From: Lepidodermella squamata
Taxonomy: Eukaryota > Animalia > Gastrotricha
DNA length: 64,000 nt
Direction of reading: 5' to 3'
Assembly: GCA_047495785.1 (NCBI GenBank)
Contig: JBLDXI010000059.1
Coordinates: 1-64,000, forward strand
Each line of letters begins with the position of its first letter. Position 1 is the first letter of the stretch. A program made the position numbers and the translations under genes. Positions 1 to 52,624 of the stretch are shown one piece after another. The notes beneath the pieces were generated by a model, which did no database searches, was not told the origin of the DNA, and was given only the letters and a program-made list of their open reading frames with translations.

Positions 1-101
1 AATTTCAAGACGTCCGTGCGATTTTTCAATCCGTGGATAACTTTGCCGACCTCGGCTGACCCTGGGGTGACATTTTCACCAAAAATCAGGCGCAGGTCCA
101 T
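1..101 (-). CDS. Family A copy A0 (5' end only; runs off the window)
   Basis: Reverse complement from ATG at 101 reads MDLRLIFGENVTPGSAEVGKVIHGLKNRTDVLK, matching the N-termini of A1 and A4. A TTTCAG acceptor lies 12 nt upstream of the ATG. Confidence 0.85.
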   Translation of the reverse strand, partial: MDLRLIFGENVTPGSAEVGKVIHGLKNRTDVLK

Positions 102-710
102 TATTTAAATCTTCTGAAATGAAAAAAAGGAATCGATAAGAACAAACGATGGAGACTTCGCAGCAAATCGAAGCCAAAGCGCGCAAAAAGCATACAATGG
201 GGTGAAGGCTATATTGGCAATCTTTTCTCAAGCTTCTTTAGGAGGCCTCCTTTATACGATGAGTGGTACCCAAGGAATGGAAGAATAGCTCCGACTAGAT
301 GGCTATACTACATGTAGAGGTTCAATGGCTGGGAAGTGATCTATTTAAATTTCAAAAGTTGGGAAAAGCCAAGCTAAAACGAGGGATAATTTGAAAATGC
401 TGATTATAATTTCAGAAACATTAGAATTTTACAATTTTTAAAGATGGAAACATTCAACATGTGACGCATCTGACAGGTGGGATCTCGGCAAATTTCCTGT
501 AACAGCAGGGCACTAGCGTGTGTTATCAAATGCTCTAATCCTATCGTTCGTAATCTTCGAAAGTAAAGTCTATAATATGAAAAAAAAACAAATAAAAGCC
601 ATTGAAAAATAAATCATATTTGACAAGTGAAAACGAATATCTTTTATTCATATAAAATTTCAAAATGGAGCATCAAGATTATTGTTATGATTAATTCTAC
701 GGAATGAAAT

Positions 711-2730
711 TTAGACGCCGGGAAAAATGATATCATCGAAATGAAACAGATCAAGGCTTTCGAACTGGGAAAATTCAGCTTCAAATTCCATATCTTCTAG
801 ATTTAGATATCGCATGAGGCTCACAGGTAGGGGCAGGCTTTTGATAGCATTTTGTCGGTTATTAAGCCCACGAGGTAACTCGCGCAAGATGGTTTGTCGA
901 GCAAGAAACTGCAGAGAAAACGGATAGGCGGACGAGAAGATTGCAGGCAGATGAGCCGGCAGATCAACACCCATGCCACGCAACCAATAATTCATATCTT
1001 CCAATGAAAACTTTTCGACGATCGTCGCCTTTTCGAATTTTTCAAGGTTGCACAACGAGAGGGCGAAGCAGAAAAATGCATGGCTCAGCGACGCATTTTG
1101 TATGATATCGGATTTTACAATGAAAGAAATCAGCCGGAGCATTTCAGCATTTTTGAATGGCATCAAGCCTTCCTGGAGATATCCAGCACGAGCCAGCGGT
1201 AGAAAACAGAACTTTAAGAAAGAAGGGGCCATTAATTCAATGTCCGCATGCTCAATTGGGAAGGCAAATATGTGGCATGCCAATTTTGCGAATGAAGCAT
1301 CTTGGCCGCGTTTGCGCGCATTTTCGACAATACGTTCAAAAACATGGTGGAAAAATTCGGAATGTGGTGAGCGATCTGCATAAGGTAACGAAGGAGTTCA
1401 ACGCAATCCAAGTCTTCAATCGATCCGAGAAATGTATCCAGCAGCATATCCACGACTTTTATTAAGTTTGTTGGTTCGTTTTCAGTCTTGAATTTTCGAA
1501 ACCAGCTGCAGCACAATTCTATCAATTAATCAAAAAGAACTGTGTATTTAGAATTAAAATTAAATTAAAAAATAATCAGTCTAGAAAATCGTAAACTTTC
1601 CAGATGAAAGGCCCATTTTCGATTGTTTTGGCATATATTTAAGGCGGTTTTTCACGCTCTAAAAGATGGCAGTAGGCGTTGAATGGTCGAAATATTAGGT
1701 GTCAAAATCTCCGCATAGCGATTTTTCTCCGCAAGACAACAGTCCTATGGCCTTGTAACACCAAGGTCCAACCATGGTAAACAGCCCACCAGAAAAACGT
1801 GCCCAGGAGTGGAGATCTAGCTACTTGCCAATGTTTTGCTATGATTTTGCGGTGATTCACGTTTTGAATTTTACAGGTGAGCGAGTGCGTCGGATTTAAA
1901 ATTCGCTTGAGTAAAATCACCTCAGCTCTATCCGAAAAAATATTTCACGGTGATCTGAAAACATGAGCTGGGTCGTCGGTCAAATCGACGTGGAATTGCC
2001 CTATTGAATTTCTTGAAATTAAGGTAGCTTTTAAAATTCTTCGTAAATTGTGCCGATTGAAAGACATAGATGAGCGAAATAGCTCATCATTCAGAGTCGT
2101 TACGGTAGTTAAAAAATTACGTTCGCAATAATGATTTCCGAAGCTGAAATAACTATAGTTGACGCTTCCCGATATCAGCTTCAGGTCACTTCGCCACATT
2201 TTAGCCAAGTCTCCACAAATCAGCACACTGTCGTCGGGAATGCTATTCGTCGCGCGGCTGTGCCAGTATAAAGCTTCAAAGTAAGCCGTGACAAGTGGTG
2301 GTAAAACATGAGCTGGAATTTCTCTTTTCTCATTTACGATTCGCCGGAATTTCTCGTAATCGCCACAACTTATCGCCAGTGATAGACCGATAAAGTCGCA
2401 GGGTGAAAACTCTGTCTTCAACTTGAAACGTGACTGTCCAGTATTCCCATTTTTCACGCGATTCAGCTCGATACAACAGTCAATGAGCGGTGGGGAAAGC
2501 CAAGTGAAGAAATTTTCAATAGCAGAATCTCTAACATAGATTGAACCGTGGGATAAGTCCAAGCCCAAGCTAACTGACCCGAAATCGGGAAGAGGCTGTA
2601 CTGAGACCTGGTCAGCCAGCTGGGGGAATTTCTCTTTCAGCATGTAAACCAGCAATCGCAAAGCATCATCCAGCGATGGACCAGCATTAAACTTATCGCT
2701 AGCGAACAAATTATAACGGACTTCAGCCAT
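711..2730 (-). pseudogene. SOCS-box protein B1 (2 exons, intron 1519-2120; apparent frameshift at A5 run 1338-1342)
   Basis: Colinear with the paralog at 21206-22630, with the same phase-1 intron (GAA C|GTAATT...TAG|AA TTG). C-terminal SOCS box SLQFLARQTILRELPRG...IKSLPLPVSLMRYL. The frame shifts between PNFSTMF and ERIVENARKRG, which could be a homopolymer sequencing error. Confidence 0.75.
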
Positions 2731-3097: not shown

Positions 3098-5365
3098 CTA
3101 GAACAAAATTTTGAAACAAGAGGTTTTCTTTCGTAGTTCATTGGTGAGACCGGCAGGTATGTTGTCAAACGAAATTTGTCGCAAAGCTTGAGCAAGAAGA
3201 CCACAGATTTGGCGTTGCCGCTCCGAAAGTTTGGCACTGCTCGATTTGATGATTTTCGTCAGTGCAATAGCGAATGCCATGGCGAACGTCTGATTCATCC
3301 ATTTTTCCGCATCAAGTTGATTCGGCCGTTGCAGCAGGTTGTTGATGATGCCGAAAAGTTCATTGATGAGACGAGGCCTAGCTTGCAGTAAAACCTCAAC
3401 AGGCAACAAAGGTTCCGGGCCAGAAATTAACAGTGTTAAACAAATCGAAGCATTGATTGGATCAAGCGTGTTCTCATACCACTTCGGCGCGAAACTCGAC
3501 AATTTTAGAATTGACGAGGCTACTTTCAGCAACGAAGCGCGATATTTAGCCGCAATTCTCGCACGAGAGACTGGATCTTTCAAATTACGAAGAACAACAG
3601 CAAGGCATACGTAACCGCTAAGCACGGTGCCTTGTTCGTAAAAGCTGAGATATAACCCGAGCAAAGGGTCAAATTTCGGGTCAGTGAGAAGTTGCGAGAA
3701 AATCGTCTCGCCCTTCATAGCAGGCCAAGCCAGGAACCTTACCAGGTGAATGACCAGTTGTCTCAAAGCTGGGTCGGTTTCGATTATTTCAGTATTCAAC
3801 GCGATCGCTGTCATGAAACTAGAGCAGAATTCGCGGTTATTCGCAGGAATCGAAGCGTACTTCTGCGCATCGGCACTTTCCGTGAAATTATGCAATCCTA
3901 CCAGGGCAGCCGTCCCTATTGTTGATCCGTGATTTTCTCGCTTCTCCAGCTCGAAAAATTTGAGGATGACACCGATAAACGAATATAGCGAGGCCAGATT
4001 GAGCAACGAATCGGGTGGCTTGGAACAACAACTTGTGGGGACTTGCCACATTATCGCATTGATCAAACGGAAGGTCCAGTAAGTCACTTCACAGCCAGTG
4101 ACGCTGTTATGTCTGCAACCGTCCCAGCCAAGGAATTCTGCGGCCGATGCTGAAGCGACGAGGCAAAATCGATCAATCGTCTGGGCAATTTCATGATCGG
4201 GCAGGCTCAGAAAATTACGTCTCATAAGTCCGTTTGATTCCCATTCAACATTAGCCTTGTTGATGATGAAATAGGAAATATTTGCATGTGAGCCGCCGTA
4301 GCCATAGTAGGAGAAAGCGTGATCAGCTGGTCCGCTGAAAATCATGAGCATCGCAGTTTTCGCGAACCAAGTCAAATCGTCGAAAAGCGGCAGTTTTCGA
4401 TTGACTTGATAGCTGGATCCAACATCCTTCCAGAGTGGCGATTCATTGTCCCCGGCAGCCACATCTGGAAACGTGAAATTGATCCAACTGCCAATGATTT
4501 CAAGGTAAGTCCCAGGAAGGGCTGTAGAAAACTTCTTCAAAGCGCCTGGGGTAGCGAGGCTTGATCCAAAATTGATCAGGAATTTACGAAACCACGGCTG
4601 CTTCTCTACCTTGCCGGCAAGATTTTTGTCGAAAAAACACATCATAACCCGCATGGTCGAAAACAAATGACCGATGAATCTCAGTTGCGATGGATTCAAT
4701 GCGACGAAATCGGCATTCGAGATCAAATCGCAGAGAAATTTATTTTCAGCCAATTTTTCAATCAGCAGAAAGCATTGCTTAGTGAAATGTGGAGTTACCA
4801 TCGGAAGCCTATTCCCAAATGGATTGATGACATTTCTAAGCAGCCACGTGAGATAGATCAACTTTTCATCCAGGTTGTCTTTCGGAGTTATCGACAAAAT
4901 AACACTCGCAGGTGAAAGACAATACATGACAGCGTCAATTTCCCTCAGATCGATGAATTTTTCCATTTCGTTTTCAATTGCAACTTTTTGTTCGACTTCC
5001 CAGTGACGGATTTTGGCCATCGTGAAGAAAGCATAGGCCCGTTTCGAGTCTCCACTTTTGTACAGCGCTTTGGCAGTGCGGCAATGCAATTCTGAATCGA
5101 ATCCTCCCAACAAATCCGAGATTTCGTACAAACAATTGACGACATCTCGCCAATTTTTAGATTCCTGGGCTTTCGCAGCTTTTTCTTCCAGCTCGGCAAT
5201 TTTCTCGTTTCTTTTGCTGACTTCATCATCACCGCCTGCAGCTCTACGACGGGCTTCATTACTCAAGTTCAGGACGTCGCTGCGATTATTCAATCTGTGG
5301 AAAAAGTTGCCCACTTCGGCTGACCCTGGGGTTACAGTTCTGCCAAAAATCAGCTTTAAATCCAT
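3098..5365 (-). CDS. Family A copy A1, 755 aa TPR-like + helical solenoid protein of unknown function
   Basis: Intronless long ORF with the MDLKLIFG...PGS start, TPR-like KAAKAQESKNWRDVVNCLYEI, and shared motifs PLFDDLTW, IDRFCL and NNREFC. Confidence 0.9.
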   Translation of the reverse strand: MDLKLIFGRTVTPGSAEVGNFFHRLNNRSDVLNLSNEARRRAAGGDDEVSKRNEKIAELEEKAAKAQESKNWRDVVNCLYEISDLLGGFDSELHCRTAKALYKSGDSKRAYAFFTMAKIRHWEVEQKVAIENEMEKFIDLREIDAVMYCLSPASVILSITPKDNLDEKLIYLTWLLRNVINPFGNRLPMVTPHFTKQCFLLIEKLAENKFLCDLISNADFVALNPSQLRFIGHLFSTMRVMMCFFDKNLAGKVEKQPWFRKFLINFGSSLATPGALKKFSTALPGTYLEIIGSWINFTFPDVAAGDNESPLWKDVGSSYQVNRKLPLFDDLTWFAKTAMLMIFSGPADHAFSYYGYGGSHANISYFIINKANVEWESNGLMRRNFLSLPDHEIAQTIDRFCLVASASAAEFLGWDGCRHNSVTGCEVTYWTFRLINAIMWQVPTSCCSKPPDSLLNLASLYSFIGVILKFFELEKRENHGSTIGTAALVGLHNFTESADAQKYASIPANNREFCSSFMTAIALNTEIIETDPALRQLVIHLVRFLAWPAMKGETIFSQLLTDPKFDPLLGLYLSFYEQGTVLSGYVCLAVVLRNLKDPVSRARIAAKYRASLLKVASSILKLSSFAPKWYENTLDPINASICLTLLISGPEPLLPVEVLLQARPRLINELFGIINNLLQRPNQLDAEKWMNQTFAMAFAIALTKIIKSSSAKLSERQRQICGLLAQALRQISFDNIPAGLTNELRKKTSCFKILF

Positions 5366-5678: not shown

Positions 5679-7862
5679 TCACGGGTTGACAAATTTTCGA
5701 GCTCGAGAAATAAGCGGCTTCAATAGAGATCCGCTTGACTTGGCAATATACCTAATAGACGGTGAGTTTTCACACAAAACAGACGTGGCCAACGTAACAG
5801 ATGAAATCACAATTTTCACAGTTACTGTTAGATTTTTGGTGAATGCTGGCTCTTTCAGCCACAAAGCTTTGCTGTTAATGAAACTTCGCAAGTTATTATG
5901 GATAGATTCGGCATCTTTGCGGCTTAAATCGCCGATTTTCGCCAACATCGGCTGACGGCCGATGAGACCATGTAAAGATAACATTGCCCAAACAAAATTA
6001 CTTGGGTCAGTCGGGCGAGATTTCAAGTTGCTAATCACATCGCCGAGAATCTTATTCCATTGCTTGGCAAATTGAGTCATTTCAAGGCGGCAATCGACGT
6101 CAATATTTTCCAGTAAAACAAACAAACACTTGAAATCACCGCCGCTTATAAACTCAACCACGTTGCGGGAGTAAGCTGAATCTTTGGTCATTAACCTGAC
6201 GAGCTGAGGCGATTTAGGATGCAAAATTGTAAGCGCGAAATATTGATGTGCAACATATAGCAGGCGGTGAAAAGATTCATCATGGTGTGTCAAATTGACA
6301 GCAAAAGGCAGCAATCTGACGAATCGATAGTAAAAATCGTCGCAGTTAAGCAAAGCTAGGATGCTGGCATTCGCTTCAAATAGAATGAAACGGAGACAAA
6401 ATTTCGATCTCAAGATGCCGAATTCATTCAAATTGCCATACGCATCAAGCAATTTTTCCAGTTCGAGAATTTTAAAAGCTGCAAACGAAGGATGGTCGGG
6501 TAAAAAAGCGCGTAGGCCGCTTTCAACAAGCATTCCACAGAACATATCCATCAAAAGACGAAAATCTGCAATAGACGTTGATGGCGATTCGTTTCGACCA
6601 GTGTAATTTCCGGGCTTCTCAAGCATCACTACTTGGAACCAATCGGCCGCAGTAATAGCCTTCGCTATGAGCAACAAATCAATAGCCTTCGATAAGGCAG
6701 TTTTATCAGTGGTTTCGATTGCTTTCATGACATTTGGATTTTTAGGCGCATCAACAACGTACGGGCTCAGTATTAAGCTCGCGATGTCAGAAGAAGGGAG
6801 CGCTTTTGAAATTTCATTTAGATTTTCTGGCATTACTCGGGTGAAAATACGAAGATTTATAGCTGAGGCAATCCAATGCAAATCATCCAGTGGTTTCATG
6901 GGAAACTGATCCTTCTTGGAAATGATCAAAGTAGCCAAACCCCACCAGGACAAGAAAATGTCCTCGAACAGCCCTTGGCCACGTGTTGAGCAAATCCGTT
7001 TCAGAGCCTCTTTCGTGACAAAACTTCGACTGAAAGACTCGAAAAAGCTTCGAAACCATGGGAGCGCAATCAGAAACTGAATTGCCTCTCCGTTACATCG
7101 CATTTTTTCGCAAGTTATGGCCCAGACAACCAACACACGGCAAAAAAACGAAACAAATTGAAGGTGGAAAAAACTCGAAGTAGCGAGGTCAGCTGTTGCT
7201 AGCAGCTTCGCCAATTTTTTGTTTTTCTCAAGTTCAGAGAGACATCCCAGTCGTTCGGACAATAGCTCATTTTTCTCATTCTTCACAACTTCGTACAAGT
7301 GAACGATAATGAAAAGCAATTGTTCAGGATATTGGGAGTCATCAATCTTTTCGAAAAGACGGTCAATCGCCTCTTGCGTGACTTTCCGATCGATATTCGT
7401 TAGTTTCCCCATGGTAAATTGCTCGCCGGTCATTTCAAAGCCGAGCAAGCTATACGCCCGCCGTATCAACGCGTAAAGCAACTCGACGCGAGGAACGTCT
7501 TTCCGAGAATGAGTGAGGACAGACCCGATGGCAATAGCTTCTTCGTACCACTTCATGCCAATGTAGCCAGTCATTATTTCGACAGCTTTTTCAGTAGAAA
7601 TTCCGAACGCAGTGTTCGTCGCCCTGCGAACAGCTTCTTCGATGCAGGTCAATCGAGCAGCAAACCCCCGCCTGTCAATTATTTCTTGAATTCGCAACAG
7701 ATCGCAATAATACTCGCAGGTGTCGAAATTCGGGGCGGCATTCAGGACAATATTTTTCGCAAAAGACGCTACTTTGAAGCGATTGTCGAGGCCTATGAAG
7801 GTCTTGTACACGTCTTCAGATCCGGGTACAGCGTTCTCTCCAAAAATTAATTCAAAAGCCAT
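5679..7862 (-). CDS. Family A copy A2, 727 aa
   Basis: Intronless ORF starting MAFELIFGENAVPGSEDVY, with PLDDLHW and IDLLL...ADW motifs. Confidence 0.88.
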   Translation of the reverse strand: MAFELIFGENAVPGSEDVYKTFIGLDNRFKVASFAKNIVLNAAPNFDTCEYYCDLLRIQEIIDRRGFAARLTCIEEAVRRATNTAFGISTEKAVEIMTGYIGMKWYEEAIAIGSVLTHSRKDVPRVELLYALIRRAYSLLGFEMTGEQFTMGKLTNIDRKVTQEAIDRLFEKIDDSQYPEQLLFIIVHLYEVVKNEKNELLSERLGCLSELEKNKKLAKLLATADLATSSFFHLQFVSFFCRVLVVWAITCEKMRCNGEAIQFLIALPWFRSFFESFSRSFVTKEALKRICSTRGQGLFEDIFLSWWGLATLIISKKDQFPMKPLDDLHWIASAINLRIFTRVMPENLNEISKALPSSDIASLILSPYVVDAPKNPNVMKAIETTDKTALSKAIDLLLIAKAITAADWFQVVMLEKPGNYTGRNESPSTSIADFRLLMDMFCGMLVESGLRAFLPDHPSFAAFKILELEKLLDAYGNLNEFGILRSKFCLRFILFEANASILALLNCDDFYYRFVRLLPFAVNLTHHDESFHRLLYVAHQYFALTILHPKSPQLVRLMTKDSAYSRNVVEFISGGDFKCLFVLLENIDVDCRLEMTQFAKQWNKILGDVISNLKSRPTDPSNFVWAMLSLHGLIGRQPMLAKIGDLSRKDAESIHNNLRSFINSKALWLKEPAFTKNLTVTVKIVISSVTLATSVLCENSPSIRYIAKSSGSLLKPLISRARKFVNP

Positions 7863-36590: not shown

Positions 36591-38807
36591 TCAAACCTTA
36601 ACAATCAGTTCAAGTTCTTTGATCAGCAATATTATCGATTTTGACTCGGCTTTGCGTACAAAAGTTTTCAACTTTGGATCAATCGAAACAAGCCAAGCGA
36701 GATTAATTGCAACAATCATCAAGACAATATCGATGTCTTTCGAAATTTTCTTCTGACGGGTTTTCATCGCGGACCGAAAAATGCGCAAAAAGCCTGAAAT
36801 CAGCTTTGAGCGATCGCTTCCTTCGAAATCAACGCTTTCAATTTTGACCAATACAGGGCATGCGATAAACAAGGAATGAAACAGTAAGAGATACAGCGCC
36901 GTGTTTTGAACACTGGCGATTTCGGAATCGATGCAAATCCGAGAGACAACATGCTGTCCGAGCTTTAAAAGCTTGATTGAAAATTTAGCAGCCAATCGAT
37001 CGCGGCAATCAAAGCTTGTCAAGCTGCGAAAAACAGCAGTGACACAACCCAACGAGAAATGTGATGGAACCTTCTTGAACTCACACAAAAATTTGACTGC
37101 AGGATCAAATTTTTCCTTATTCATTAATCTAGCGAAAAAGGAATCTCTGAACGAAGGCGCAGAAAGCAGAAAATCGACAACGGCAAAGATGAATTTGTGA
37201 TAGCCGGGAATAAGCGAAGAAATTTCGTGGCTCATCACAGCATCAACGCGACTTAACAGCTAGCCGACAAATCGCTTGCAGAATTCTTTGTTATTCACAG
37301 CGCGGGATGAATCTGGCTTTTCAGCTTTGAAAGAAATCAGTTCCAAGTTGCGAATCGACACAGCAAGCTCCGGCTGGCCAGAATCAGACGTTAGGTTATC
37401 CAAATGCCGACAGCAAAATTCGATTTTCAACGCGTAAAAAACGTAAATTGACGACATTCGCATGATTTCGGTTTGGACAGGTGTAGCCTTGAAATTCATG
37501 AAAACTCCGGCTAAAATGTTTGAAACAGCGCAGGTCAAAATCTGGGTTGTGATATAATGAGGAACGTAAGAGTCTTCGTTCTTGTTTCTCAAGAACTGGC
37601 ACTGCCATTCAGCAAACGCAGCCATTCCAAGCAAGCACAATCGATCAATCGATTCAATAACCTCTTTCGACGACAATTTGTTCGCAGATTTTACAAATTG
37701 GGTGTAATCGGGACGGTGCGGATTCCCCTGTCCCATGGTCATCAAGAATGCGGAGATTTCAGTAGCACCACTTGGGCTGCAGTGGGTGAGAGGATTGAAT
37801 GGGCCACCGCTGAACAGCAGAAGGAGGGCCACTTTCGTGCACCACGCAAAATCGTTGAAAGGCGGCATGTGATCGACTCTGATTTTGCAAGCTTTGAAAA
37901 GCATTGCGATTTGATACCAACCGTGAATAGCATCGTCAAAAGCTCCCATCGGGGCAATTGCCAGTCTCTTGATCGCTTCCGGTTTGGCGAGACTCAAGCC
38001 GAAATTTGTAACAAATTTTTTGGCCCATGGCAGCTCGGGGATTAAAGAATGCAAATCCAGCGCTATGCAATACATGAAAATCATTTTGGTAAATTGGCCG
38101 AGAAATCGGAGCTGGTTCAAATTCATGTTAACAAAATCCGCCTTATCCAACAAATCGCTCAAAAACGGACTCTTGGCTATCCCAGTGACGAGCTTCATTC
38201 CTTCATTTCTCGCCTGCTCACGAAATTTCGCTAAATATTTTGTAGCCCGCAATAGGTAGAAGAACGCTTCCATCCAATCAAATGGTTCGACAAGGCTCAG
38301 AATTGGATCAATCGGAGATGACATATCCATCGAGCCGCCAATTTCGAAGGGTAAGACGAACTCGACTGGGAAGTGGCCGTGCTTAACGTAGAAGTCTCCA
38401 AGTCGCAGGCCGGGTCTGCCACAACGGGGGTCCATAGGGCCGTAGCACGACATTCGAAGAGAGTACAGTCCAACAACCTGCCGAAACTTCCGTTTTTCCA
38501 GTAGAAGATCTGCGATGTCAGTGAACGCGAAAAAATCCCATTCTCCATCAATTTCCGCAACTTGATTCATGTATTTCATATATCCGTCATAGTCACCCTC
38601 GATCGAAGCATCGCCAGCTTTCATTTCCAATTGAAAAGTGGCATCATGCCTTGCATCGATAGCCTCCTGGCCGCCAGCCACTGTCTCCCGCAGTTCTTCG
38701 CGGAATAGAGCAACGGCTTCGCGGTTCTTCAAACGAACCAGCACATTGCTAACTGCATCTGATCCTGGTTCAACATTTTTACCGAAAAAAAGATGGTTAA
38801 AATCCAT
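36591..38807 (-). pseudogene. Family A copy A8 with a single in-frame TAG (37260-37262)
   Basis: Track ORFs 37260-38807 and 36591-37238 are in the same frame. FCKRFVG*LLSRVDA aligns with FCDRFVDSVLARMET of A7. Confidence 0.8.
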
Positions 38808-41664: not shown

Positions 41665-42045
41665 TCATGAGGCGTAAAATGAAATAAGCGTAGCAACTAG
41701 TTCTCGAATGTCAGTTCTGTAGTCTTCAGGTAGCGTCTTCAGGTAAGTTATTTCGTCGTCAATCATTTCGAGTAAATTCGGAGGAAGCCCGTCGGCAACA
41801 GCGTCGGCAAATTTCTGGCCCAGTCCGAAGATGACCATATTTTTGGCATTTCCTCGCCCATCAAGGTGAATAAACTTTCCAGAACGAGTTCTCACGACAT
41901 TGGAAGAAATCCGTTCAGCGATGAGGGTAGTGTAACCTCTACCCCGCTTTTTCGACAAAAATCCTTCAACAATGCAGCCGCGAAAATTTTGCTCTGGAAT
42001 GATGCTCCAATCGCTTAGAATCAAATCAACTTTGTACGAGGTCAT
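41665..42045 (-). CDS. Stand-alone SANTA-domain protein (KNL-2/M18BP1 N-terminal domain-like), 126 aa
   Basis: LSDWSI...IVEG...TTLIAERISSNVVRTRSGKFIHLDG...GLGQKFADAVADGLPPN matches the SANTA pattern LxDW..veG..T.I..Ri..l.T.sG..y.L.G..Gf..F..GFP. Confidence 0.75.
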   Translation of the reverse strand: MTSYKVDLILSDWSIIPEQNFRGCIVEGFLSKKRGRGYTTLIAERISSNVVRTRSGKFIHLDGRGNAKNMVIFGLGQKFADAVADGLPPNLLEMIDDEITYLKTLPEDYRTDIRELVATLISFYAS

Positions 42046-42246: not shown

Positions 42247-45200
42247 TTACGCTAGAAAGACAGTTTCACTTTCTTTGATTGCATTTTTCAGCTGAGCCAG
42301 GATGACTGAGCGATGAATTTCACGATCGGAAATGTAGATCTTGCGACAGCGCTTGTCATTTTTGGAAAGACCAGCCAGGATGATACCAGATAACATCACA
42401 ACCAAATAGTACATTTTAAACAGATATAGCTGCTGCCCTCGCAATTTTTGACGGCGAAATGCCGGTTTCATGTCATTAATTTTTTCGGAAATCGTTCGGA
42501 TTGACACGGCAAGTGCGTACATCATTGCAATCATTCGCCGGGGCTTCACCGCCTCGTCGAGATCAGCCAGAAATGGCGATGAACCGAAAATGGCGACAAG
42601 CATTGCCATGTAATTTTGGAAATCAGGCAGGGTAGCTTCGGATGTTGCGACGCAAGTACATTCGATGAATTCGTTAACAGCTCGACCAGCCACATTTTGG
42701 AGTTGAGATTTGTACTTTGCGAGAACTTGCTGGCGATAGCTTTCAGTCCCAGCAGCGATGCATCTCAGGTAATTAGCGACACATTCGTGCGAAACAAAGT
42801 CGAACTGGTTTTTCGGGTTTAGAACAACGCTTAGAAAAACGTCACTGATTTCAGGCCGGCGGAAGTAATCGGCAAACGATGAGCGGTAGCTTTTAACAGC
42901 CAGAAAGTCGGAAACAACGTTGATGACATCAGCGTATGGACCATTGCCATCACACAACGCAGAGGCTGATGGATCGCTGAACCTGATTCCAGGTAATTTT
43001 GGCACCAATACGGCATAGGTTTTGAACAGTCGTTCGGAATATTCCGGGCAATTCACAAGCTCAACCAGTAATGAATAATCTTTGAGGTGCAAGCGGCCGT
43101 TGACAACGTTGAGAATGCTCTCTAAAAATACATGAATACAGTATTTATCGAAAAGAATAAATTTTCGCGCATTTAGAACTACTTACTTAAATTAAATTGA
43201 AAATTGAGAATTTTTGGAAATTTCAAAATTTTTAATTTTCAATTAATTAACAGTACACTTTAATTCCGATATCCAAGGACTAACACTGACTCGATCAACG
43301 CTGACTTTGAACATGGGCAGAAATTAAATCCTAGGGTTTAAGCCATGAATTTCTTTATTTCCTGCTTTTTAAGATTAAAACTTAATGCAAAGCCAATTCA
43401 TGCTTCTACTGCTGATTCCAAGTTACTTTATACAGGCAGTCATCGCCCGAACGTTTGTTGCTATGGCAAATGGAAACGTTGACTCGTCAATTTCCATATT
43501 TAGCTCTGCTGAGCGGTTTACCCTCGTTCTGCAATATGAGCACGCCATCGACATCATAAGACCACTGGTCAAGCCCGTTGATCTGAAACCAAGCTGCGAC
43601 ACTAGATTCACCGATGTCTACGATTTTGAATCGCCCGTCGGACCTGAGACGGAGGTAAACGTCAATCTCGCTGGTCGAGTTCTTCAATTCACCCATAAAG
43701 GCATCGTCACTACGACTCAGGGCGACCACAACCGCGACATTGCTGGAGCTGTTTTAACAGTCGTTAATTCAGTGAACGTTATGCTAAGTTAGTAATGATA
43801 ATTATTTATTAAGATATTTTCAAGTCGCGAGGTTCACGAGGTTCAAGAGATCTTATTCAGATATTCATTTTGAATCTTGATTTTATCTTGATTTGAAATT
43901 TTCGCAGATATTCTGATCTGGGGCGACAAGGAAGTCGCGTTATTGGAACGTCTTCAACGTGAACATTTGATAGCTGGCCAACATGTGTGGGCATATTGGG
44001 TTCAAGCTTGCGTTCGACGGGATGGCATAGTTGTGACGTGTGGCCGAACTTTCATCGGGCTTGACAGCACTGCTCGCCGAGATTTGATGGTACAGCCCAA
44101 CAGGTCAGACCGCTGGGAGTTTCGCCGGACGGATACTGTTTTGTTGCGAGATCTCGAAGCAGCTCGAAAGCAACGGTTATTAGATCCCGTCGAGGCTGCA
44201 GCTGAAGCCGCCGTTGCTCAACAACACGCCGCTCAACCAGCCCTATCTCCAGGTCCAGCCGCTGCTCCTAATAATGGTCCAACTGTCTCCATAGCTACTG
44301 CAGCTGCACAGCCGCTTATCGCATACGCGGCGATATTTCTCGAATTTTTTAGCGAGGACAATCGTGTGCGCACCATGCGCCAAGCCGATGACCTCCGCAT
44401 AATCTTCAATAGAGTAAATTTAGAATTTTATAGCCAATAGGTATATTTTGCCACTTTCTTTCACTTAACTTTCGTGAAACATAGCTGTCCGACTGAAGAC
44501 ACCCCAACAAGCGACCCTAAGAGCGCTCATTCAGGACCCTTGGCTTCGGCCCGTCAATTCAACGAATGGGACGGGACGTCTTAAAATGAATCCATTTCTT
44601 TTTACTTTTTATTTTCGTGAAATTTTCTCTCTACGACTTCGTGCGTTGTTCAGGCAAATTCAAAACATCTCTGCTCTTCCCTCCGTTTCCTCTGCGGCGT
44701 TTCCTCCGTTTGTGATATTTTCCGTAAAATTGCCGCTATGGCGTTACTTTCTCACGCCCACTCGCCGGCGATCCTGGGCCAATTCGTGCCATGCTGTTAC
44801 TTTTATGTAACCACCGGACGATTCCTCGCCATCGGTTGTGTTTTCACGGAGGCGGCTGCCTATATTTCTGTCGCTATCACATGCATTGTGTCCCAACAAG
44901 ATTATAGCTTACCTGCGATCTCTGCTACTCTGGCTGCCTCATCCTTGCTGGATAGGCTAACAATAATCGTGATCACATTACCACACCGCTCCAATTGAGC
45001 GGCTTAAATTTTACTGGTTTGCGGATCTCAATGAAAGTGAACCGCTGGCCGTACCTAGTGACATTCTCAAGTTTCGGTACATACACTATCTGGACAAAAA
45101 GATTGGCACAAGGCGAAAATAAGTGTAAAATTGACCATATGTTGCTTTCGCGCGCTCTAGGAACTTATGATGCCACAAATTGTTTTCGCGCCATCACGTC

Positions 45201-48200
45201 CTTAATAAACCTCAAGTTTAGACATGAATTCATTCATCCGCCATGCACACACCCACTATTCGAGCCCGAATCATCGGTATGCGAGAGGGTGGCATTTCAT
45301 GCCCTTTCATTGCCGAAAGGCTTGGATTGCCTAAGCGTACAGTCTATAGAATCGTTGAAATGTTTGAGAAACGTAAGGTAATAAAGGGCCGAACCAGTCC
45401 TGGCCGTCCCCAGAAGTTGACTGACTCGGCTGTGCGTCGACTAGCCCGAGAGGCGCGGTCGAGCAGAAGAATGTCGACTCCAAAGCTGGTCGGTAGGTTC
45501 CCGATGTGACCATTTCCAAGCTCTGGGCTCTATTCCTTCCCTATTTAGCCTCATTTAACGTTACCCTGAGCCCTAGGAGGCGCATTTCGCCCAAGACAGC
45601 AACTCGTCGGTTGAAGGCGGTCGGTTTCAAGCGCAAAGTTGCCGCTAAGAAACTTGCTTTGTCGGCTGCCGATCGATCCAAGCGTTTGAAGTGGGCCAAA
45701 GAACATCGGGATTGGTCGGTCGAAGACTGGAAGAAAGTGATGTTTACCGATGAATGCCGGTTTGGCTTCCGTTCGGATGGTCGGCAATGGGTTTGGCGGC
45801 GAGTTGGAGAACGTTTTCACCCCGATTGCACGATCACAAAGTCGAAAAGTCGGGCTGGAGTCATGTACTGGGGCGCGATCACCTCAAACGGGCAGTTCCA
45901 CTTCCGCAAGTGTGAAGGGCGCGTCAATGCCAATCAGTACATTCAGATCTTGACGGCGGCCGGCATTCAACGAAGAACCAACACGAAAACATTCATGGAC
46001 GACAATGCACCCATTCACCGCGCCAAAACCGTGACAGCTTGGCTCAATCGCAACCGCGTGCGACGTTTGAAGAGCTGGCCCGCCTATTCTCCCGACTTGA
46101 ACCCCATTGAAAATGTTTGGGCGGTGATGAAACAGCGTCTACGTCAGCGCGTTCCACAGCCAGTCTCGCTGGATGACCTTGAAATGGCCGTCGAAGAGGA
46201 ATGGGACGCTATTGGTCAAGAAATCATCGAAAACCTGTACCAATCCATGCCCAACCGCTGTCAGATGGTCATCCAATCCAAAGGCGCGCCCATCAATTAT
46301 TAGGGCCTCGGTTGACTTTCCATGCTTAAATTGACTCTTTTTCACTTTGTCCATCGATTTCACTCATTTGAGTTGGTTTTAGGCTAAATATAAACGAATT
46401 AGGCCAATAAAATAGCTTAAACGCGTGTTTTTGAGCAGTGTGCCAATCTTTTTGTCCAGATAGTGTAGCACCTTTGCACATGTTCAAATGTGACACTTAT
46501 TTCGCCAAAAAAGTGACATCGACTATAGTAAAATATCGCGTAAAATAACGTAGGCCGAACCCAGGCCAGGACGGACTTGACAATACCAATGGATACGAGT
46601 ATAAACGATACCATTTTCAGAAAAAGACCAAACTGTTTATATTTTTAATGTTGTAAGCCTATGAAAAATGTCACCAAAAATGTTACGATACGACAGGAAA
46701 CTGCTGATAACCACGGCCTTCATTCGTTAGCCGTTTGTAAAAACCCCAATGTGAGGACTGAGGAAATTCTGGAATCGCTGTATTCTAAGGTGGATTCTAC
46801 AAACCCAGGCGCTGAACTGTCCGTTACACATCTTGCAATCTCTATATGCCTCCCGTTAATGATGCTAACTTCTGAGAATTGAGAAGCCTCTTGAAGTACC
46901 TCTTTAAACCCTGCGTTGCACAGATAAAATTCCATAACGTGCGCATTTACCTGTCATTGAAAGCTACACCGCATGATTTGTTACAATTTAGAATTTACTG
47001 AGCAAGACCCAATAATAATTGCCAATATGTAAGTATTATAATACGTTACATCGGTTAAACAGGGTATTCGCGCGATAATACTTTTCTAATAATAGCTTTT
47101 AGCTTTGCTGCTCTTTTCATGCACTTGAACTTTTTTGTAGCTATTTTTAGCTCAATCAGAGCATAGATAGCCCTGTAAATCTCTCATTAAAAAAAATGAA
47201 AAAAATTCTTACGAAATAAGTCGAAGTCGATCGATTTCACTCGGGACATATTTTCAACAAGAAATTCGAGTCTGAAGGTCCAGTGCAAAGCAGACGTCAC
47301 ATGAGCTGTAGCGTGTCCTTTGATGAAAATGTCATCGAACATGGTCAGCGACGGCAGGATTGCATTCATGACTCTCATTAGCTCTTTCGTGGTGACAGTC
47401 GGTTCAACGGGCAAAATACTCGCCGGTGGTCTATTAATTAGTTCCGATTTCCATTCGGCAAAATTAATCTGACCAAGAGTGAACAGAAGATCGAGAACTT
47501 TGCGACACTCGACCCTTGACAAATTGCTCATGCTTTTGAAAATCATCGGATGCTCTTCGTCGATAATTCGAGTCAAACGTTGAATGAAAGTCGCCGATAT
47601 GTCGGGCTGATCCTTATCGCAGATTGTTTTACGATCGACGCTGAAGCGTTCACCCATGAAAATCGACAGCCAGCCCATCGAAATGTAGAACTTCACGTCA
47701 TCGTACGGCGGAACAACTGGCAGTTTGTGGTGAACAGAATCGATTGGCATTATCATCAAATGCATGCACGTAAAGAAGAGCAGACTTTCGAAATTAAACG
47801 TGATCAATGAGTAGTCGTATTGAGCCAATCGAATCAGCGACTCTTTTGTGACAACGGTCTTCGCAAAATTCGATATCAGGACCTGGAACCATTTTTTACG
47901 CACTAAATCAGGCTCGCCAACTAAAGTATTCAATATCCGAATTAAACAGGTCATGAACCTCAACTTGGCCGGTTCATCTGTGCCGAAGTTGACCGACGTG
48001 AACAGATCAGAAACAGCTTGAGAGTTGGCAAAGCGAGATACAATGCGATCAACATTATCTTCGAGATACTCGCGGTTTTGATCCTTTTTAATTTCGAATT
48101 GATATAAAATGTGGGTTGCGGGGAACAAATTTTCCTCCCACGGCGTGCTTGTCTTGAACGATAACAGCTTATCAAACGATTTCGCGAGGTCTTGCGCAGT

Positions 48201-48629
48201 CAAAGAACAGGTCGGGAAAAGCTCTTCGTAACCTTTTTCTACAACTTCTTTAAAAATTCGTTTGCTATGAATTTTACTGGCGACGAAGGCCAATGAAACT
48301 GCTTCTTTCAGTCGGTTCAGCTTTTTAAGGCAATCAATAGCTAGTTCGAAATCTTGGCAGGAAAAATCTCCATTCAGCCTGCTCACTTCGACTAAAGCTG
48401 AATAGGCTTTCGCGTACATTTCTTCGCGGAAAAATTTCATCGCCGAAGTTCGAAGCTCGTTTACTTTTTCTAGTCGAGCTTTTACAGCATCCCTGCCACC
48501 AGCTGCCTTCAAACGAATTTCGTCGCAAATTTTCTTCGCATCTTGCGGATTGTTCAGCTGCAACAGTAAACTGTAAACTTCCCTGGAACCTGGTTTAGTT
48601 TTATCTCCGAAAATCAATTCAAAAGCCAT
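42247..48629 (-). CDS. Family A copy A10, 763 aa, split by a 4091-nt intron (43122-47212)
   Basis: TTT C|GTAAG donor and TTTTTAG|AG AGC acceptor are phase-compatible. The join reads DFDLFQSILNVVNGRLHLKDYSLLVELVNCPEYSERL and restores the family length. Confidence 0.8.
43385..44440 (+). CDS. Nested antisense gene, OB-fold-like (RPA70-type) protein; intron 43788-43907; 5' end uncertain
   Basis: Phase-1 splice gives VNVNLAGRVLQF...AVLTVVNSVNVMLNILIWGDKEVALLE...GQHVWAYWVQ, resembling OB-fold strands (VDvxGxV...LtLWG). Followed by an Ala/Pro-rich tail. Confidence 0.5.
45084..46465 (+). mobile_element. Tc1/mariner transposon, 1382 bp, apparently intact
   Basis: Perfect 27-bp TIRs CACTATCTGGACAAAAAGATTGGCACA (45084-45110, 46439-46465) and TA target-site duplication on both sides. 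Confidence 0.97.
45243..46303 (+). CDS. Tc1-family transposase (334 aa, intron 45493-45548, DD35E)
   Basis: Paired-like HTH with GRPQK, then VMFTDE, MDDNAPIH and WPAYSPDLNPIENVW. A 56-nt GTAGGT...TTTAG intron joins the two track ORFs in frame. Confidence 0.93.
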
Positions 48630-48920: not shown

Positions 48921-50223
48921 TTAAACATTTTCATGATTGCGCAGCGCGCCTAGTTTGATCCGATTAATAGAATTGAGCTTTTCAGTCGATTTTTCAGGCT
49001 CGACCACTGACTGCCTAGCATCATTAGATTGCTGATTCACCAAACCGACGATGAGCACTTCAACAGAAGACGCCGGCAAAGCTTTTCCGGTTAAATAAGT
49101 CTCGACTCGAAGCTTGGACGTGAATGTCTCGCCAATTTTCCGATTTTTTGTATCAAAATTAAGGCGAACCGGAGCCTGCTCCCCAGGGCCTAACTCTAGC
49201 CGGTCGACCAGGTAGTTCTTATCGCCGTCAAAAGTCGCAGAAATTTCAACTGGGCACGATCCATTGTTGGCAATCATCATGCGACGAGTCGTCAATCGCC
49301 CAGCCTGGCAGGGAATGACCAGATTATCGAGTTCCTTCGCATTTTCATCGAGTATTTTCACATCGATCGATTCGAATTTCACGATCATATTTCGACAGCA
49401 TAAATCGATCGGCGGGGATGTCATAGTAGACAAAACCAGGTCGATATGAGCGCTGTCGCGTTCACGACGAGGTAAACAAAACATTGTAAATTCTTGCTTC
49501 GAAAATTGAGTAATGTCAAAAGTTAAGCTGGATTGAGTTCCAGCTAGAGATGAAACCTTCGCTAGATTCGTGTCATAAGACAAGCCGAAATGCAGAGAAG
49601 CCCAGTCGGGGCAAATTCTAACTTGCAGAGGTAAAGGTGAATCAGCAAGAGAATTGAAAGAACGCAGTTTGATTGAAAATACAGCAGAGCGGCAAGTACC
49701 GACTGGCACTGAGTCGAATGAATCTTCTTCGCCGCTTATTTCGAGATCAACCGCTGGAACGGACGCGTAAGCTGCGAATCGAATAGGGTGACAAATGAAA
49801 GACTTGTTGTCAGAACTAATAAATAAGTTGATTTTAGCCGAATACGACCCGGGCTTCTGGGGCCGGAAGTCGAATTTCAGCGCGACAGTGCCGCCCGGGG
49901 TAAGGGCCGCTGATGGCTTAGTGGCAATAAATTGATCGGTTGCCACGACAAGTTCTCCATTCAATCGCAAGGTTTCGACTACAGAGGAGATTTTCAGCAG
50001 AGGATCGGCGCAATCAGGTCGCATTTCGAGCTCTAGAACGGTTTCATAGCACTGACCAATCCAGAGATCAACATCTTCCTCTAGCCAATTAGCGTAAATC
50101 GGAGAATCATCCCACAAAGTTAATGAATCGAACTAAAATTAGAAGAATTTATATATCAGAAGATGAAAATGTTCAAATTGAACTGACTTGATCGGTTAAA
50201 TCTGCGAGGGCAATATCGGCCAT
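48921..50223 (-). CDS. ASH/PapD-like Ig-fold repeat protein C2 (intron 50133-50187)
   Basis: LTPGGTVALKFDFRPQKPGSYSAKI, MMIANNGSCPVEI and LELGPGEQAPVRLNF motifs. Shares VGxCRSAVFS and HFGL with C1. Confidence 0.65.
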
Positions 50224-50335
50224 GCGAATGCCGAAAATCAATTTAATAATAACACTATACCGAAATAGATTTCAAAAATCAATAATTTGACGATTTCTTT
50301 ATCACACAAAGCTTCAACAAATAGGCACAATTATT

Positions 50336-52624
50336 TCAAATTGAATCAATTTTCTTTGCAGCAGATTCCAGCTCGCCAATAACGCTTTCCAACGCTTTTC
50401 TCTGATTCTCGAAAACACCAATCGCTTTCATTTCTTCGGTTAGATGCCGAACAAAATGTGACAAGCTGTCATATGGCCATGACTTGGCATCAAGCGGTTC
50501 GGCAAGGGCTCGATTCGAAATCAACTCGACTAGTTTATCGATCTCTTGAGGTAATGCATCACTTTTCGAGAGGTTTTCAAATGAAACAATCGCAGGCTTT
50601 CGAATTACGATTTCGTTAAATGATTTCAGAGTCGAGTTGTAATTTTTTGCCTTGACTTTCTTTCCAGGATTCACGATTCTCTCGAATAGATCCAACGCCA
50701 GTCGTTGCAATGGAGCCGCGAGCTGTTTCACCCAACGTCGCCGAGATTCATCATCCGCTCGGCTGAGCAATTGCTCGAGGAATTTCACGCTGATGGGGTT
50801 GCCTTTATCGAAGAAATTCCCCTTTTCAAGAGCAAATCGAATGACAGTCAGTGCGCATTCCTCGTAGAAAAATCTAGAAAAATGACTCGAGCTGTCTGAG
50901 CTTGATAGAAGAGTGAAAACAGCGTCCATCGCGAGTCGGAACGTCTCTTTGCCGTCCAAACCCTCCTTCTCCAGCCGCTCACTAATCGCTGGGATTTGCT
51001 TGGAAATCGAACGTAAAAATGACTCAGCAAATGGCTGGCAATTTGCGAGATTAGCCACCTGACTAGGACTTGCGGCAATCCAGCAAGCGTAGGGTGTTAG
51101 CTGGAAATTATCGACGAGGTAAACACAGTCGTTTTTCTCAAACTTCTTCATATCCGGAGCGAGACTTTCAACCAGATGAGCCGATAGCACAAATAGAGAT
51201 AAATGCTCGAGGAAATACGAATTTAGCTTGTTGTCTTTTCCGAAGCAATGGCTGATTTTCGTTAAAAGTCGACTCATGTGGGAGAATAAATCGGTTTCAG
51301 TGATTGATTTGTAGTTTAAAGCTGATTTCGATTTCTTAAAAATGACATCTTTCCACTCCGCGTAATTGACAGCAGTGATTAATAGGATCAAGTCGAGCGA
51401 TTTTCCGAAATCTTCACGCGATAAATTTTCCAGCTGGCTCTTGAATGAAGCATGAGACACTAGTTGCTTCAGAAAAAGAGGAACTGTGTCGACAAAAGGC
51501 GAAATTACGTTCTCAGCAACCCCACTTTGTTCGCCGGTTCGAACGCCGTCGAAAATCACCATTGGCAAACAGCCGCATAGCCAGGTGAAATCGTGGAATG
51601 GCGATAGATTTCCATCGGAAAACGGACTAGTATCAGCATTTTCAGTTGAAAGCGCCTCTAGTAACGGGTAGGCTAGCGCCAACCAAGATCGAATCAGCGG
51701 GTCGATCGAGCCGGGTATTTGCTGCGACATCTTCACGTAAAAATCCCGCGTCGCCAGGGTCGAAGTTAAACACGCCAGCAATTTGAAGCACCAATGCTGG
51801 GCGATTAGTTCACGTTTAATCGACTTGTTAACAATCATTTTCTGCCACCAAAAATCGATGACTGGGAGGAAATTCTCGAGAAAACGACGATCAGCCCCAG
51901 TTAAGTTTCCGGACTTGACTTTCGCTAAAACAGCGACAATGGCTGGAACAGTTTTAATTTTCACGAAAAAATCGTTCCGTTGAGCTAGAATCGTTTCCGA
52001 CTCAGTTTTCCGGTATTTTCGATGAGCTTGAACGTGGTAGAGCAAGAAAGTAAGCTGGTCGAGATTCGAATTCGGGCCAATTTCAAATTTCAAAATGTTA
52101 TCCAGGGTTTCTTCCAAATCAGAGTCGCCAAACGGCTTCGGAACGACGATGCTGAAACGATCTTCGCTGATGATTTTTTCGAGTTGATTTTTAACAAAAT
52201 CGTGATAACCCAGAGCGTGGTAGCTCCAGGCATACATTGACGCCAACTGACTTCGCGAACCTTCACAGGCGTGTTTGACGAAAACGATCGCCTCATCGAA
52301 GCGCTTCAACTCGATCAGCACTGACATGAAGCAGATAAGTCGATCTGGGCTGGATAAAGCTCCGGCTTGTTCAATCGCCTCGTAAAATGCCGAATAAGCT
52401 TCGAGGTAGTTGTTAGCAGCAAATGCATCGCTGCCGTGATTTTCCAGGTCTTGGATTCGGTGCTTCATGTCGTGAACAGCCTCTTTCCCGCCAGCAGCGT
52501 TCAAACGGGCAGCGTCGCAAAACCTCTCGACATCAGTTCTCTCTTTGAGCGAAAGTAAAACATTGTACACATCAGCCGATCCGGGAACGGCGCCAGACCC
52601 GTAAATTAGCTCAAATGCGTCCAT
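50336..52624 (-). CDS. Family A copy A11, 762 aa
   Basis: MDAFELIYGSGAVPGS start, the clearest TPR (LENHGSDAFAANNYLEAYSAFYEAI), and PFHDFTW and LDLIL...AEW motifs. Confidence 0.9.
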   Translation of the reverse strand: MDAFELIYGSGAVPGSADVYNVLLSLKERTDVERFCDAARLNAAGGKEAVHDMKHRIQDLENHGSDAFAANNYLEAYSAFYEAIEQAGALSSPDRLICFMSVLIELKRFDEAIVFVKHACEGSRSQLASMYAWSYHALGYHDFVKNQLEKIISEDRFSIVVPKPFGDSDLEETLDNILKFEIGPNSNLDQLTFLLYHVQAHRKYRKTESETILAQRNDFFVKIKTVPAIVAVLAKVKSGNLTGADRRFLENFLPVIDFWWQKMIVNKSIKRELIAQHWCFKLLACLTSTLATRDFYVKMSQQIPGSIDPLIRSWLALAYPLLEALSTENADTSPFSDGNLSPFHDFTWLCGCLPMVIFDGVRTGEQSGVAENVISPFVDTVPLFLKQLVSHASFKSQLENLSREDFGKSLDLILLITAVNYAEWKDVIFKKSKSALNYKSITETDLFSHMSRLLTKISHCFGKDNKLNSYFLEHLSLFVLSAHLVESLAPDMKKFEKNDCVYLVDNFQLTPYACWIAASPSQVANLANCQPFAESFLRSISKQIPAISERLEKEGLDGKETFRLAMDAVFTLLSSSDSSSHFSRFFYEECALTVIRFALEKGNFFDKGNPISVKFLEQLLSRADDESRRRWVKQLAAPLQRLALDLFERIVNPGKKVKAKNYNSTLKSFNEIVIRKPAIVSFENLSKSDALPQEIDKLVELISNRALAEPLDAKSWPYDSLSHFVRHLTEEMKAIGVFENQRKALESVIGELESAAKKIDSI

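What the first reader, a model, noticed from the sequence alone, without database searches (positions are those of the whole stretch)
1..52624. Candidate new system: 52-kb co-oriented array of an unrecognised TPR-helical family interleaved with SOCS-box, ASH and SANTA genes
Seen: 12 paralogs of one ~650-765 aa family, 4 SOCS-box genes, 2 ASH-repeat genes and 1 SANTA-only gene. All are on the minus strand, mostly intronless, intermixed rather than in separate blocks, and include recent pairs (A1/A4, A5/A6) and disrupted copies (birth-and-death pattern). The array continues off the left edge. Established: SOCS boxes recruit Elongin B/C-Cullin5 E3 ligases, SANTA is the KNL-2/M18BP1 centromere-licensing domain, ASH repeats occur in Cep192/Spd-2/ASPM, and animal operons are enriched for germline/maternal genes. 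Inference: a co-expressed, fast-evolving recognition plus degradation module, either germline conflict or control of centromeres and centrosomes, or intracellular immunity analogous to nematode F-box/pals expansions. I do not recognise family A as a named family.
Basis: partly seen in the sequence, partly recalled or inferred. Interest (0 to 1): 0.9.

Follow-up and report, generated by a model that had tools for sequence, protein, structure and literature searches.

The report
Expanded TTC12-like gene family, mixed cluster
A 52-kb same-strand gene row in a tiny invertebrate holds twelve old, conserved copies of a helical docking protein that probably descends from the normally single-copy cilia-assembly helper TTC12; the ubiquitin-adaptor, centrosome-type and centromere-type genes mixed in look like neighbours, not proven partners.

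Summary
The array is real: 12 family-A genes (11 complete, one cut by the window edge), 4 SOCS-box, 2 ASH-type and 1 SANTA-only gene, all on the minus strand. Family A folds as a TPR head plus an armadillo body (pLDDT 83). Its least-diverged outside relative (P0005) is single-copy among housekeeping genes in its locus, keeps 4 of 5 Hsp90-clamp residues and matches TTC12 best (ESM features 0.96). TTC12 is also the best predicted-structure match of A7 (TM 0.43, weak). TTC12 ancestry is likely (about 60%) but was not tested by alignment. All window copies lost the clamp. The genes are under purifying selection (dN/dS 0.22-0.27; allelic pN/pS about 0.09), not fast-evolving. A and SOCS genes are not paired (3 adjacencies against 4.8 by chance). 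Acceptors before 17 of 19 ATGs and 79-300-nt spacers suggest a trans-spliced operon layout; no RNA data were available. The scan noted similar TPR-ARM arrays and SOCS arrays on many other contigs, mostly apart; the TTC12 link is new. The proposed four-family system is not supported.

The parts
1..101 (-). A0: first 33 codons of a family-A gene, runs off the left edge; closest to A4/A1
   Evidence: tBLASTn 70% to A4; ATG at 101
711..2730 (-). B1: SOCS-box gene, exon 2730-2121, 602-nt GT-AG intron, exon 1518-711; frameshift in a T run at 1351-1355 (pseudogene or assembly error)
   Evidence: 52% identical to B4
3098..5365 (-). A1, 755 aa, intronless
5679..7862 (-). A2, 727 aa
8400..10565 (-). A3, 721 aa
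11646..13898 (-). A4, 750 aa; 68% identical to A1, dN/dS 0.22
14677..15864 (-). B2: SOCS-box protein, 395 aa; 80 nt downstream of the B3 stop
15945..17297 (-). B3: SOCS-box protein, 450 aa
21206..22630 (-). B4: SOCS-box protein, 457 aa, 51-nt intron at the same position as in B1
24295..25650 (-). C1: ASH-type Ig-repeat protein, 438 aa, predicted 39-nt intron after codon 30
   Evidence: 31% to C2, E 8e-45
26322..28418 (-). A5, 698 aa
29526..31487 (-). A6, 653 aa; lacks about 50 aa of the TPR head; dN/dS with A5 0.27
32578..34773 (-). A7, 731 aa; modelled: N-terminal arm (1-45), TPR-like head (about 46-150), armadillo body (about 160-731)
34853..35966 (-). B3GALT-type galactosyltransferase (spliced; 5' exon inferred), unrelated to A/B/C, 79 nt before the A7 ATG
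   Evidence: Pfam Galactosyl_T E 4e-24
36591..38807 (-). A8, 738 codons with an in-frame TAG at 37260-37262
38940..41150 (-). A9, 736 aa; AATAAA and next acceptor within a 132-nt spacer before A8
41665..42045 (-). SANTA-only gene, 126 aa
   Evidence: Pfam SANTA E 2.9e-9; weak M18BP1 hit E 0.58
42247..48629 (-). A10: two exons (48629-47213, 43121-42247) around a 4,091-nt GT-AG intron that holds a Tc1/mariner element; spliced model open, 763 aa
45082..46467 (+). Tc1/mariner transposon with terminal inverted repeats (29 nt perfect) inside the A10 intron
48921..50223 (-). C2: ASH-type Ig-repeat protein, 415 aa, 55-nt intron after codon 12; 112 nt downstream of the A11 stop
50336..52624 (-). A11, 762 aa, first gene of the row

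Best explanation
The window is a mixed birth-and-death gene cluster in a compact animal genome with an operon-like layout. SHOWN: family A encodes TPR-plus-armadillo solenoids without membrane-length hydrophobic stretches, which are old and under purifying selection and have lost the Hsp70/Hsp90 tail-binding (EEVD clamp) residues still present in an outside relative. INFERRED (about 60%): the family descends from TTC12, the cytoplasmic TPR-ARM co-chaperone for axonemal dynein assembly. INFERRED mechanism: each paralog is a cytoplasmic docking or assembly factor that holds its own client protein in the armadillo groove without direct Hsp90 docking; the conserved N-terminal arm is a structural cap or a shared partner site. 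The SOCS-box genes are independent Elongin B/C-cullin substrate receptors from a second genome-wide expansion. They, the two ASH genes, the SANTA fragment and the galactosyltransferase share the strand because of local tandem duplication and insertion into trans-spliced runs, not because they form one machine.
For: Fold: AF2 pLDDT 83, pTM 0.83; armadillo matches Z 12-13.6 over residues 160-731. P0005 is homologous beyond the TPR (hhalign 93%, E 3e-7) and its head matches Hop/PP5/Sgt TPRs at Z 17-18. P0005 hits TTC12 clusters in the top six ESM rows (0.96, 215 of 256 features) ahead of UNC-45 (0.92). The A7 model's best TM by query in the Atlas is TTC12 (0.43 over residues 164-686; UNC-45B 0.33). 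TTC12 is 705 aa with TPR and ARM domains (PMC10267457, PMC9406135). Clamp positions R-N-N-K-L in P0005 are lost in all window copies. dN/dS is 0.22 and 0.27, and no 100-codon window exceeds pN/pS 0.57. Haplotype differences in A8/A9 are 30 synonymous to 10 replacement, pN/pS 0.09, p 2e-12. A-B adjacencies are 3 against 4.8 in shuffles. Acceptor-like sites precede 17 of 19 ATGs against 29% background, p 5e-8.
Against: No sequence alignment to TTC12 was obtained: profile search of 1.84 billion representatives returned 4 unnamed relatives and no TTC12, and word-based searches found nothing useful. TM 0.43 is under 0.5. The ESM hit could reflect shared architecture only, and A7 itself scored plant ARM-TPR proteins (0.88) and UNC-45 (0.87) with no TTC12 in the ten rows shown. 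No clients and no expression data. Scan notes report A-like/SOCS mixing on two other contigs (unchecked). The allelic sample is only the 40 best-supported of 217 differences.
Confidence: 0.55

Rival explanations
1. One reading: A proteins recognise targets and co-transcribed SOCS-box proteins deliver them to Elongin B/C-Cullin5, forming a coupled module (germline conflict or centromere/centrosome control, with the ASH and SANTA fragments as baits or decoys).
For: All genes co-oriented with tight spacers. B1 precedes A0 and its paralog B4 lies upstream of A4, a close relative of A0, which allows one B+A co-duplication. Notes s1-422690 and s1-387759 report similar mixing elsewhere (unchecked). 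SOCS boxes are intact.
Against: No pairing. 12:4:2:1 ratio. A glycosyltransferase is inside the row. Outside relatives lack such neighbours in the DNA held. Purifying selection. Notes list many single-family arrays and SOCS genes mixed with other families.
Confidence: 0.15
2. Family A is an old repertoire of cytosolic immune sensors (TPR-ARM surfaces that bind pathogen proteins), kept diverse by gene turnover rather than by codon-level positive selection, comparable in role to nematode F-box and pals expansions.
For: Very deep paralog divergence (16-36%), disrupted copies and many arrays (notes). Loss of the chaperone clamp shows a change of job.
Against: pN/pS 0.09 between haplotypes and no region of excess replacement in two pairs. 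No effector or signalling domain was found.
Confidence: 0.15
3. Family A kept the TTC12 job and the cluster is a cilia/centrosome-building operon: paralogs specialise on different dyneins or cell types, and the ASH-domain genes (a ciliary/centrosomal fold) are co-expressed for that reason.
For: TTC12 is a dynein-arm assembly factor (PMC8836003, PMC8535419). C2 hits HYDIN/CFAP65/Cep192 Ig domains. Both C genes directly follow an A gene, one at 112 nt.
Against: Clamp lost. Far more paralogs than plausible dynein clients if the notes are right. C after A is expected by chance when 60% of the genes are A.
Confidence: 0.08
4. Family A derives from UNC-45 (TPR plus central ARM domain, UCS domain lost) or from another TPR-ARM protein rather than TTC12.
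For: UNC-45 is the top Foldseek PDB hit for A7 (E 8.8e-4) and among the top for P0005; ESM features 0.85-0.92.
Against: TM only 0.16-0.20 and rmsd above 30 A. No UNC45-central Pfam hit in 14 members. No UNC-45 chain among the best 60 profile hits in PDB. TTC12 was not seen in any PDB result, so it probably could not compete there. A has a 45-60-aa extension before the TPR.
Confidence: 0.1

Closest known systems
TTC12 (dynein-arm assembly co-chaperone; PMC10267457, PMC9406135, PMC8836003)
   Same: About 700-760 aa, TPR head followed by armadillo repeats; best ESM feature match of P0005 and best predicted-structure match of A7.
   Different: TTC12 is normally a single conserved gene (own knowledge). 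Here there are 12 copies in one window at 16-36% identity, with a degenerate TPR, no clamp residues and no detectable sequence match.
UNC-45 myosin co-chaperone
   Same: TPR plus ARM order; weak Foldseek and feature hits.
   Different: UNC-45 is about 930 aa with a UCS domain; whole-chain TM 0.2 or less; no UNC45-central hit.
SOCS-box (ASB-type) Elongin B/C-Cullin5 substrate receptors
   Same: C-terminal SOCS box above the Pfam cut-off in all four B genes; LPLP Cul5-box motif in B1 and B2.
   Different: N-terminal parts have no Pfam match and little mutual similarity; B3 and B4 have variant Cul5 boxes (LQLP, LGLP).
Nematode F-box/MATH-BTB and pals expansions (own knowledge)
   Same: Clustered birth-and-death families of adaptor-like proteins.
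   Different: Those show strong positive selection in substrate-binding parts; the pairs and alleles tested here show purifying selection.
Spliced-leader operons of nematodes and tunicates (own knowledge)
   Same: Same-strand runs, spacers of 79-300 nt, poly(A) signal followed by a lone acceptor before the ATG.
   Different: Several spacers are 0.5-3.9 kb; no leader was seen on these transcripts (no RNA run).
KNL-2/M18BP1 and Cep192/HYDIN/CFAP65 ASH proteins
   Same: SANTA domain; ASH-type Ig repeats.
   Different: SANTA gene is 126 aa without a Myb/SANT domain; C genes are about 420 aa, far shorter than Cep192 or HYDIN, and cannot be assigned to one of them.

Membership tests
TTC12 | Three-TPR head followed by an armadillo body, about 700 aa | tested here: met
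   A6 has a shortened head
TTC12 | Nearest named cluster by language-model features or predicted structure | tested here: inconclusive
   P0005 0.96 to TTC12; A7 model TM 0.43, best but under 0.5; A7 features favour plant ARM-TPR and UNC-45
TTC12 | Significant sequence or profile similarity across the armadillo region | tested here: inconclusive
TTC12 | Role in axonemal dynein assembly | not testable with these tools
   needs knock-down or localisation
Hsp70/Hsp90 clamp-type TPR co-chaperones | K-N-N-K-R carboxylate clamp | tested here: not met
   lost in all 11 window proteins aligned; P0005 keeps R-N-N-K-L
UNC-45 | UNC45-central domain and UCS domain, about 930 aa | tested here: not met
SOCS-box receptors | C-terminal BC box plus Cul5 box | tested here: met
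   Pfam above cut-off in B1-B4; motifs
SOCS-box receptors | Ankyrin repeats (ASB subfamily) | tested here: inconclusive
   no Pfam ankyrin hit; not folded
Positively selected immune repertoire (F-box/pals-like) | dN/dS above 1 or replacement excess in binding regions | tested here: not met
   site models with orthologs not possible
Spliced-leader operon | Lone acceptor before ATG and tight spacers | tested here: met
   17 of 19, p 5e-8; spacers
Spliced-leader operon | Leader on mRNA 5' ends or polycistronic RNA | not testable with these tools
   no RNA run listed; run X1 behaves as DNA
KNL-2/M18BP1 | SANTA plus Myb/SANT domain | tested here: not met
   SANTA only, 126 aa
Cep192/Spd-2 | Cep192-specific ASH domains above cut-off | tested here: inconclusive
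   D1 and D3 hits below cut-off; HYDIN/CFAP65 equally good

The most novel reading that the evidence does not exclude
TTC12, a single-copy ciliary co-chaperone elsewhere, was amplified in this lineage into a large clamp-less receptor family that is co-transcribed with SOCS-box cullin adaptors and with stand-alone ASH and SANTA fragments, forming a recognition-and-degradation module for centrosome/centromere or pathogen proteins.
Probability: 0.1. Interest if true: 0.85.

Novelty: new variant of a known kind. Interest (0 to 1): 0.47.

Why it matters
If the TTC12 origin holds, a gene whose loss causes human ciliary dyskinesia and that is normally single-copy has been expanded here into a large, old, conserved family that no longer docks on Hsp90. 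That would be an unusual case of a ciliary co-chaperone turned into a general docking scaffold. It would also give a named ancestor to an 'orphan' family that this scan flagged on many contigs. I found no paper describing such an expansion. The four-family system would matter more, but the evidence does not support it.

Tried and rejected
Word-based homolog searches with the A alignment, P0005 and the P0005 TPR region gave nothing useful (P0007 is an unrelated poly-TPR protein, hhalign 6%). Two metagenome contig scans found no relative. Phage tBLASTn gave no match. Pfam gave no family for A. UNC-45 membership was rejected (see rivals). No A protein has a match to the BC-box pattern I scanned, so a ZYG-11/FEM-1-type self-adaptor reading found no support; none has a 19-residue hydropathy above 2.0. 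Reading A10 as two broken genes was rejected because the halves join in frame at GT-AG. The state of the A8 stop in run X1 is unknown: no variant at 37260-37262 is among the 40 shown, and 177 were not shown. The B1 frameshift was not checked against reads. Spliced models were joined only in local scripts from window.fa for frame checks and the tree; database searches used exon references, and the joined search step was left out. A direct alignment to TTC12 was left out because no tool returned a TTC12 sequence and I did not type one from memory. The primary TTC12 paper (PMC7011118) is not held.
Full report
OBSERVATION. Six-frame translation and all-against-all BLAST confirm a row of 20 minus-strand genes between 1 and 52,624. 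In transcription order they are A11, C2, A10, SANTA, A9, A8, GalT, A7, A6, A5, C1, B4, B3, B2, A4, A3, A2, A1, B1, A0 (A0 runs off the edge). Family A has 12 members of 653-763 aa, mostly 16-36% identical, with two recent pairs at 68% and 60%. Pfam confirms four SOCS boxes, one SANTA domain and ASH-type Ig hits in C2. The two apparent fragments at 47-48 kb and 42-43 kb are one gene: they join in frame over a 4,091-nt GT-AG intron that holds a Tc1 element, giving 763 aa. B1/B4 share an intron position and C1/C2 each have a short first intron. Disrupted copies are A8 (TAG at 37260-37262) and B1 (frameshift in a T run at 1351-1355). A public run (X1) covers every bin of 36,400-42,390, including spacers, mostly at 99% or more, with a second haplotype at half depth, so that stretch is real genomic DNA.

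HOST. Not identified by my own tests. Scan notes suggest the gastrotrich Lepidodermella squamata. Its published assembly (122 Mb, 157 contigs, 43% GC, 3% heterozygosity; PMC11660948) fits this window's GC and the scan's 1,993 windows on 147 pieces.

WHAT FAMILY A IS. AlphaFold2 with the 11 paralogs gives a confident all-helical model (pLDDT 83, pTM 0.83): an ordered N-terminal arm, a TPR-like head and an armadillo body (VIA Z 12-13.6 to HspBP1, p115/Uso1, CTNNBL1 and beta-catenin; these values show the fold class only). A profile search of 1.84 billion representatives found four unnamed relatives. P0001 (766 aa, E 6e-73) lies between two receptor-like genes on a 4.9-kb contig. P0005 (751 aa, same cluster as P0003) is single-copy in a 21-kb locus among a Bax1-inhibitor gene, a TPR gene and aldo-keto reductases. 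P0005 is homologous beyond the TPR (hhalign 93%, E 3e-7). Its head is a canonical co-chaperone TPR (Z 17-18 to Hop, PP5 and Sgt2) with four of five clamp positions kept (R67, N71, N102, K132; L136), whereas none of the window copies keeps the clamp. In the tree P0001 falls among the window paralogs when P0005 is taken as the outgroup (97/99 support, long branches, root assumed), so the family is probably older than this species.

TTC12 LINK. For P0005 the top six ESM Atlas rows are TTC12 clusters (0.96, 215 of 256 features), ahead of UNC-45 (0.92). Separately, the A7 model's best TM by query among Atlas structures is TTC12 (0.43/0.44 over residues 164-686; UNC-45B 0.33). TTC12 is a 705-aa protein with TPR and ARM domains (PMC10267457), has three TPRs (PMC9406135) and is a cytoplasmic dynein-arm assembly factor (PMC8836003, PMC8535419). 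From memory only, and so as a lead and not a test, vertebrate TTC12 also resembles P0005 at W122 in the second TPR and around residues 232-244. Against this: no TTC12 came up in any sequence search, TM is under 0.5, and A7's own features favoured plant ARM-TPR proteins and UNC-45. UNC-45 fails on length, whole-chain TM (0.2 or less) and Pfam. I put TTC12 ancestry at about 60%. The word TTC12 occurs in no earlier finding of this genome, and I found no paper on such an expansion.

SELECTION. dN/dS is 0.22 (A1/A4), 0.27 (A5/A6) and 0.21 (B1/B4 first exon). No 100-codon window exceeds pN/pS 0.57. Among the 40 listed haplotype or strain differences in A8 and A9, 30 are synonymous and 10 replacement, pN/pS 0.09, Fisher p 2e-12. 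Seven of the ten replacements fall in the first 36 codons of A9. The sample is 40 of 217 differences and window averages can hide single selected sites. The deep divergence reflects age and turnover more than rapid diversifying selection.

IS IT ONE SYSTEM? A-B adjacencies number 3 against 4.8 in shuffles, and three of the four B genes form a block. An unrelated enzyme gene is embedded. The outside relatives have no B, C or SANTA neighbour in the DNA held, though only one locus is long. Scan notes (unchecked; I could not confirm they are the same family) list many TPR-ARM-only arrays, many SOCS-only arrays, SOCS genes mixed with TRIM, ankyrin or viperin genes, and two TPR/SOCS mixtures. This fits two genome-wide expansions that sometimes share a neighbourhood. 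Co-orientation is expected from tandem duplication and from an operon-rich genome. A T-rich AG acceptor lies within 45 nt of 17 of 19 ATGs against 29% of spacer positions (p 5e-8). Several spacers are only 79-300 nt, two with AATAAA inside. This is the layout of spliced-leader operons, but 5'-UTR introns could give the same signal where spacers are long, and no RNA run was available.

MECHANISM. Shown: fold, loss of the clamp, purifying selection, gene layout. Inferred: cytoplasmic TPR-ARM docking or assembly factors with paralog-specific clients, descended from a TTC12-like co-chaperone; B proteins as independent Elongin B/C-cullin receptors (from established SOCS-box biology); C and SANTA as short domain-only duplicates whose partners are unknown. 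The coupled module (0.15), an immune repertoire (0.15), a ciliary operon (0.08) and a UNC-45 or other origin (0.10) remain as rivals.

VERDICT. Observation confirmed with corrections; interpretation partly supported. New variant of a known kind; interest 0.47.

Noticed in passing
window 34853-35966 (-): Spliced B3GALT-type galactosyltransferase embedded in the array, stop 79 nt before the A7 ATG.
   Followed up: partly
window 45082-46467: Tc1/mariner element with 29-nt perfect terminal inverted repeats and a DDE transposase ORF (45497-46300 +) inside the A10 intron.
   Followed up: partly
window 43379-44995 (+): Unassigned ORFs (137, 182 and 125 aa, no Pfam match for the two tested) in the A10 intron; probably another mobile element.
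   Followed up: no
window 18452-19045: 594-nt foldback element (arms 97-100% complementary), MITE-like, in the 3.9-kb gap between B4 and B3.
   Followed up: no
window 20009-20663: 11-13-nt palindromic subrepeat arrays (AAGGCGCCTT-like), resembling transposon subterminal repeats.
   Followed up: no
window 17644-18306 (-): Two broken ORFs of 117 and 103 aa without Pfam match, possibly a mobile-element remnant.
   Followed up: no
window 40940-41232: The second haplotype differs at 25 of 286 bases over the A9 5' end, with most of the listed replacement changes in the N-terminal arm.
   Followed up: partly
window 7804-7867 and 10507-10570: A2 and A3 share 81% DNA identity over their first 21 codons although the proteins are 28% identical overall (strong constraint or gene conversion).
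   Followed up: no
window 38845-38878: A 32-nt deletion in the other haplotype within the 132-nt A9-A8 spacer.
   Followed up: no
window 53614-62740: Right of the array: Kunitz-like secreted protein exons (53.6-54.4 kb, by eye), a Cys-loop channel-like exon (58532-59167, by eye), intronless GDP-mannose 4,6-dehydratase (59238-60284 -) and a STELLO-like glycosyltransferase (61170 onward +).
   Followed up: no
L002:10001-12243 and L003:361-2616: P0003/P0006 and P0005 are the same gene; L002 lacks 13 nt relative to L003, which splits the frame.
   Followed up: yes
L004:74-1000: The relative P0002 continues in a second exon after a short GT-AG intron at a position not seen in the window's genes.
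   Followed up: partly
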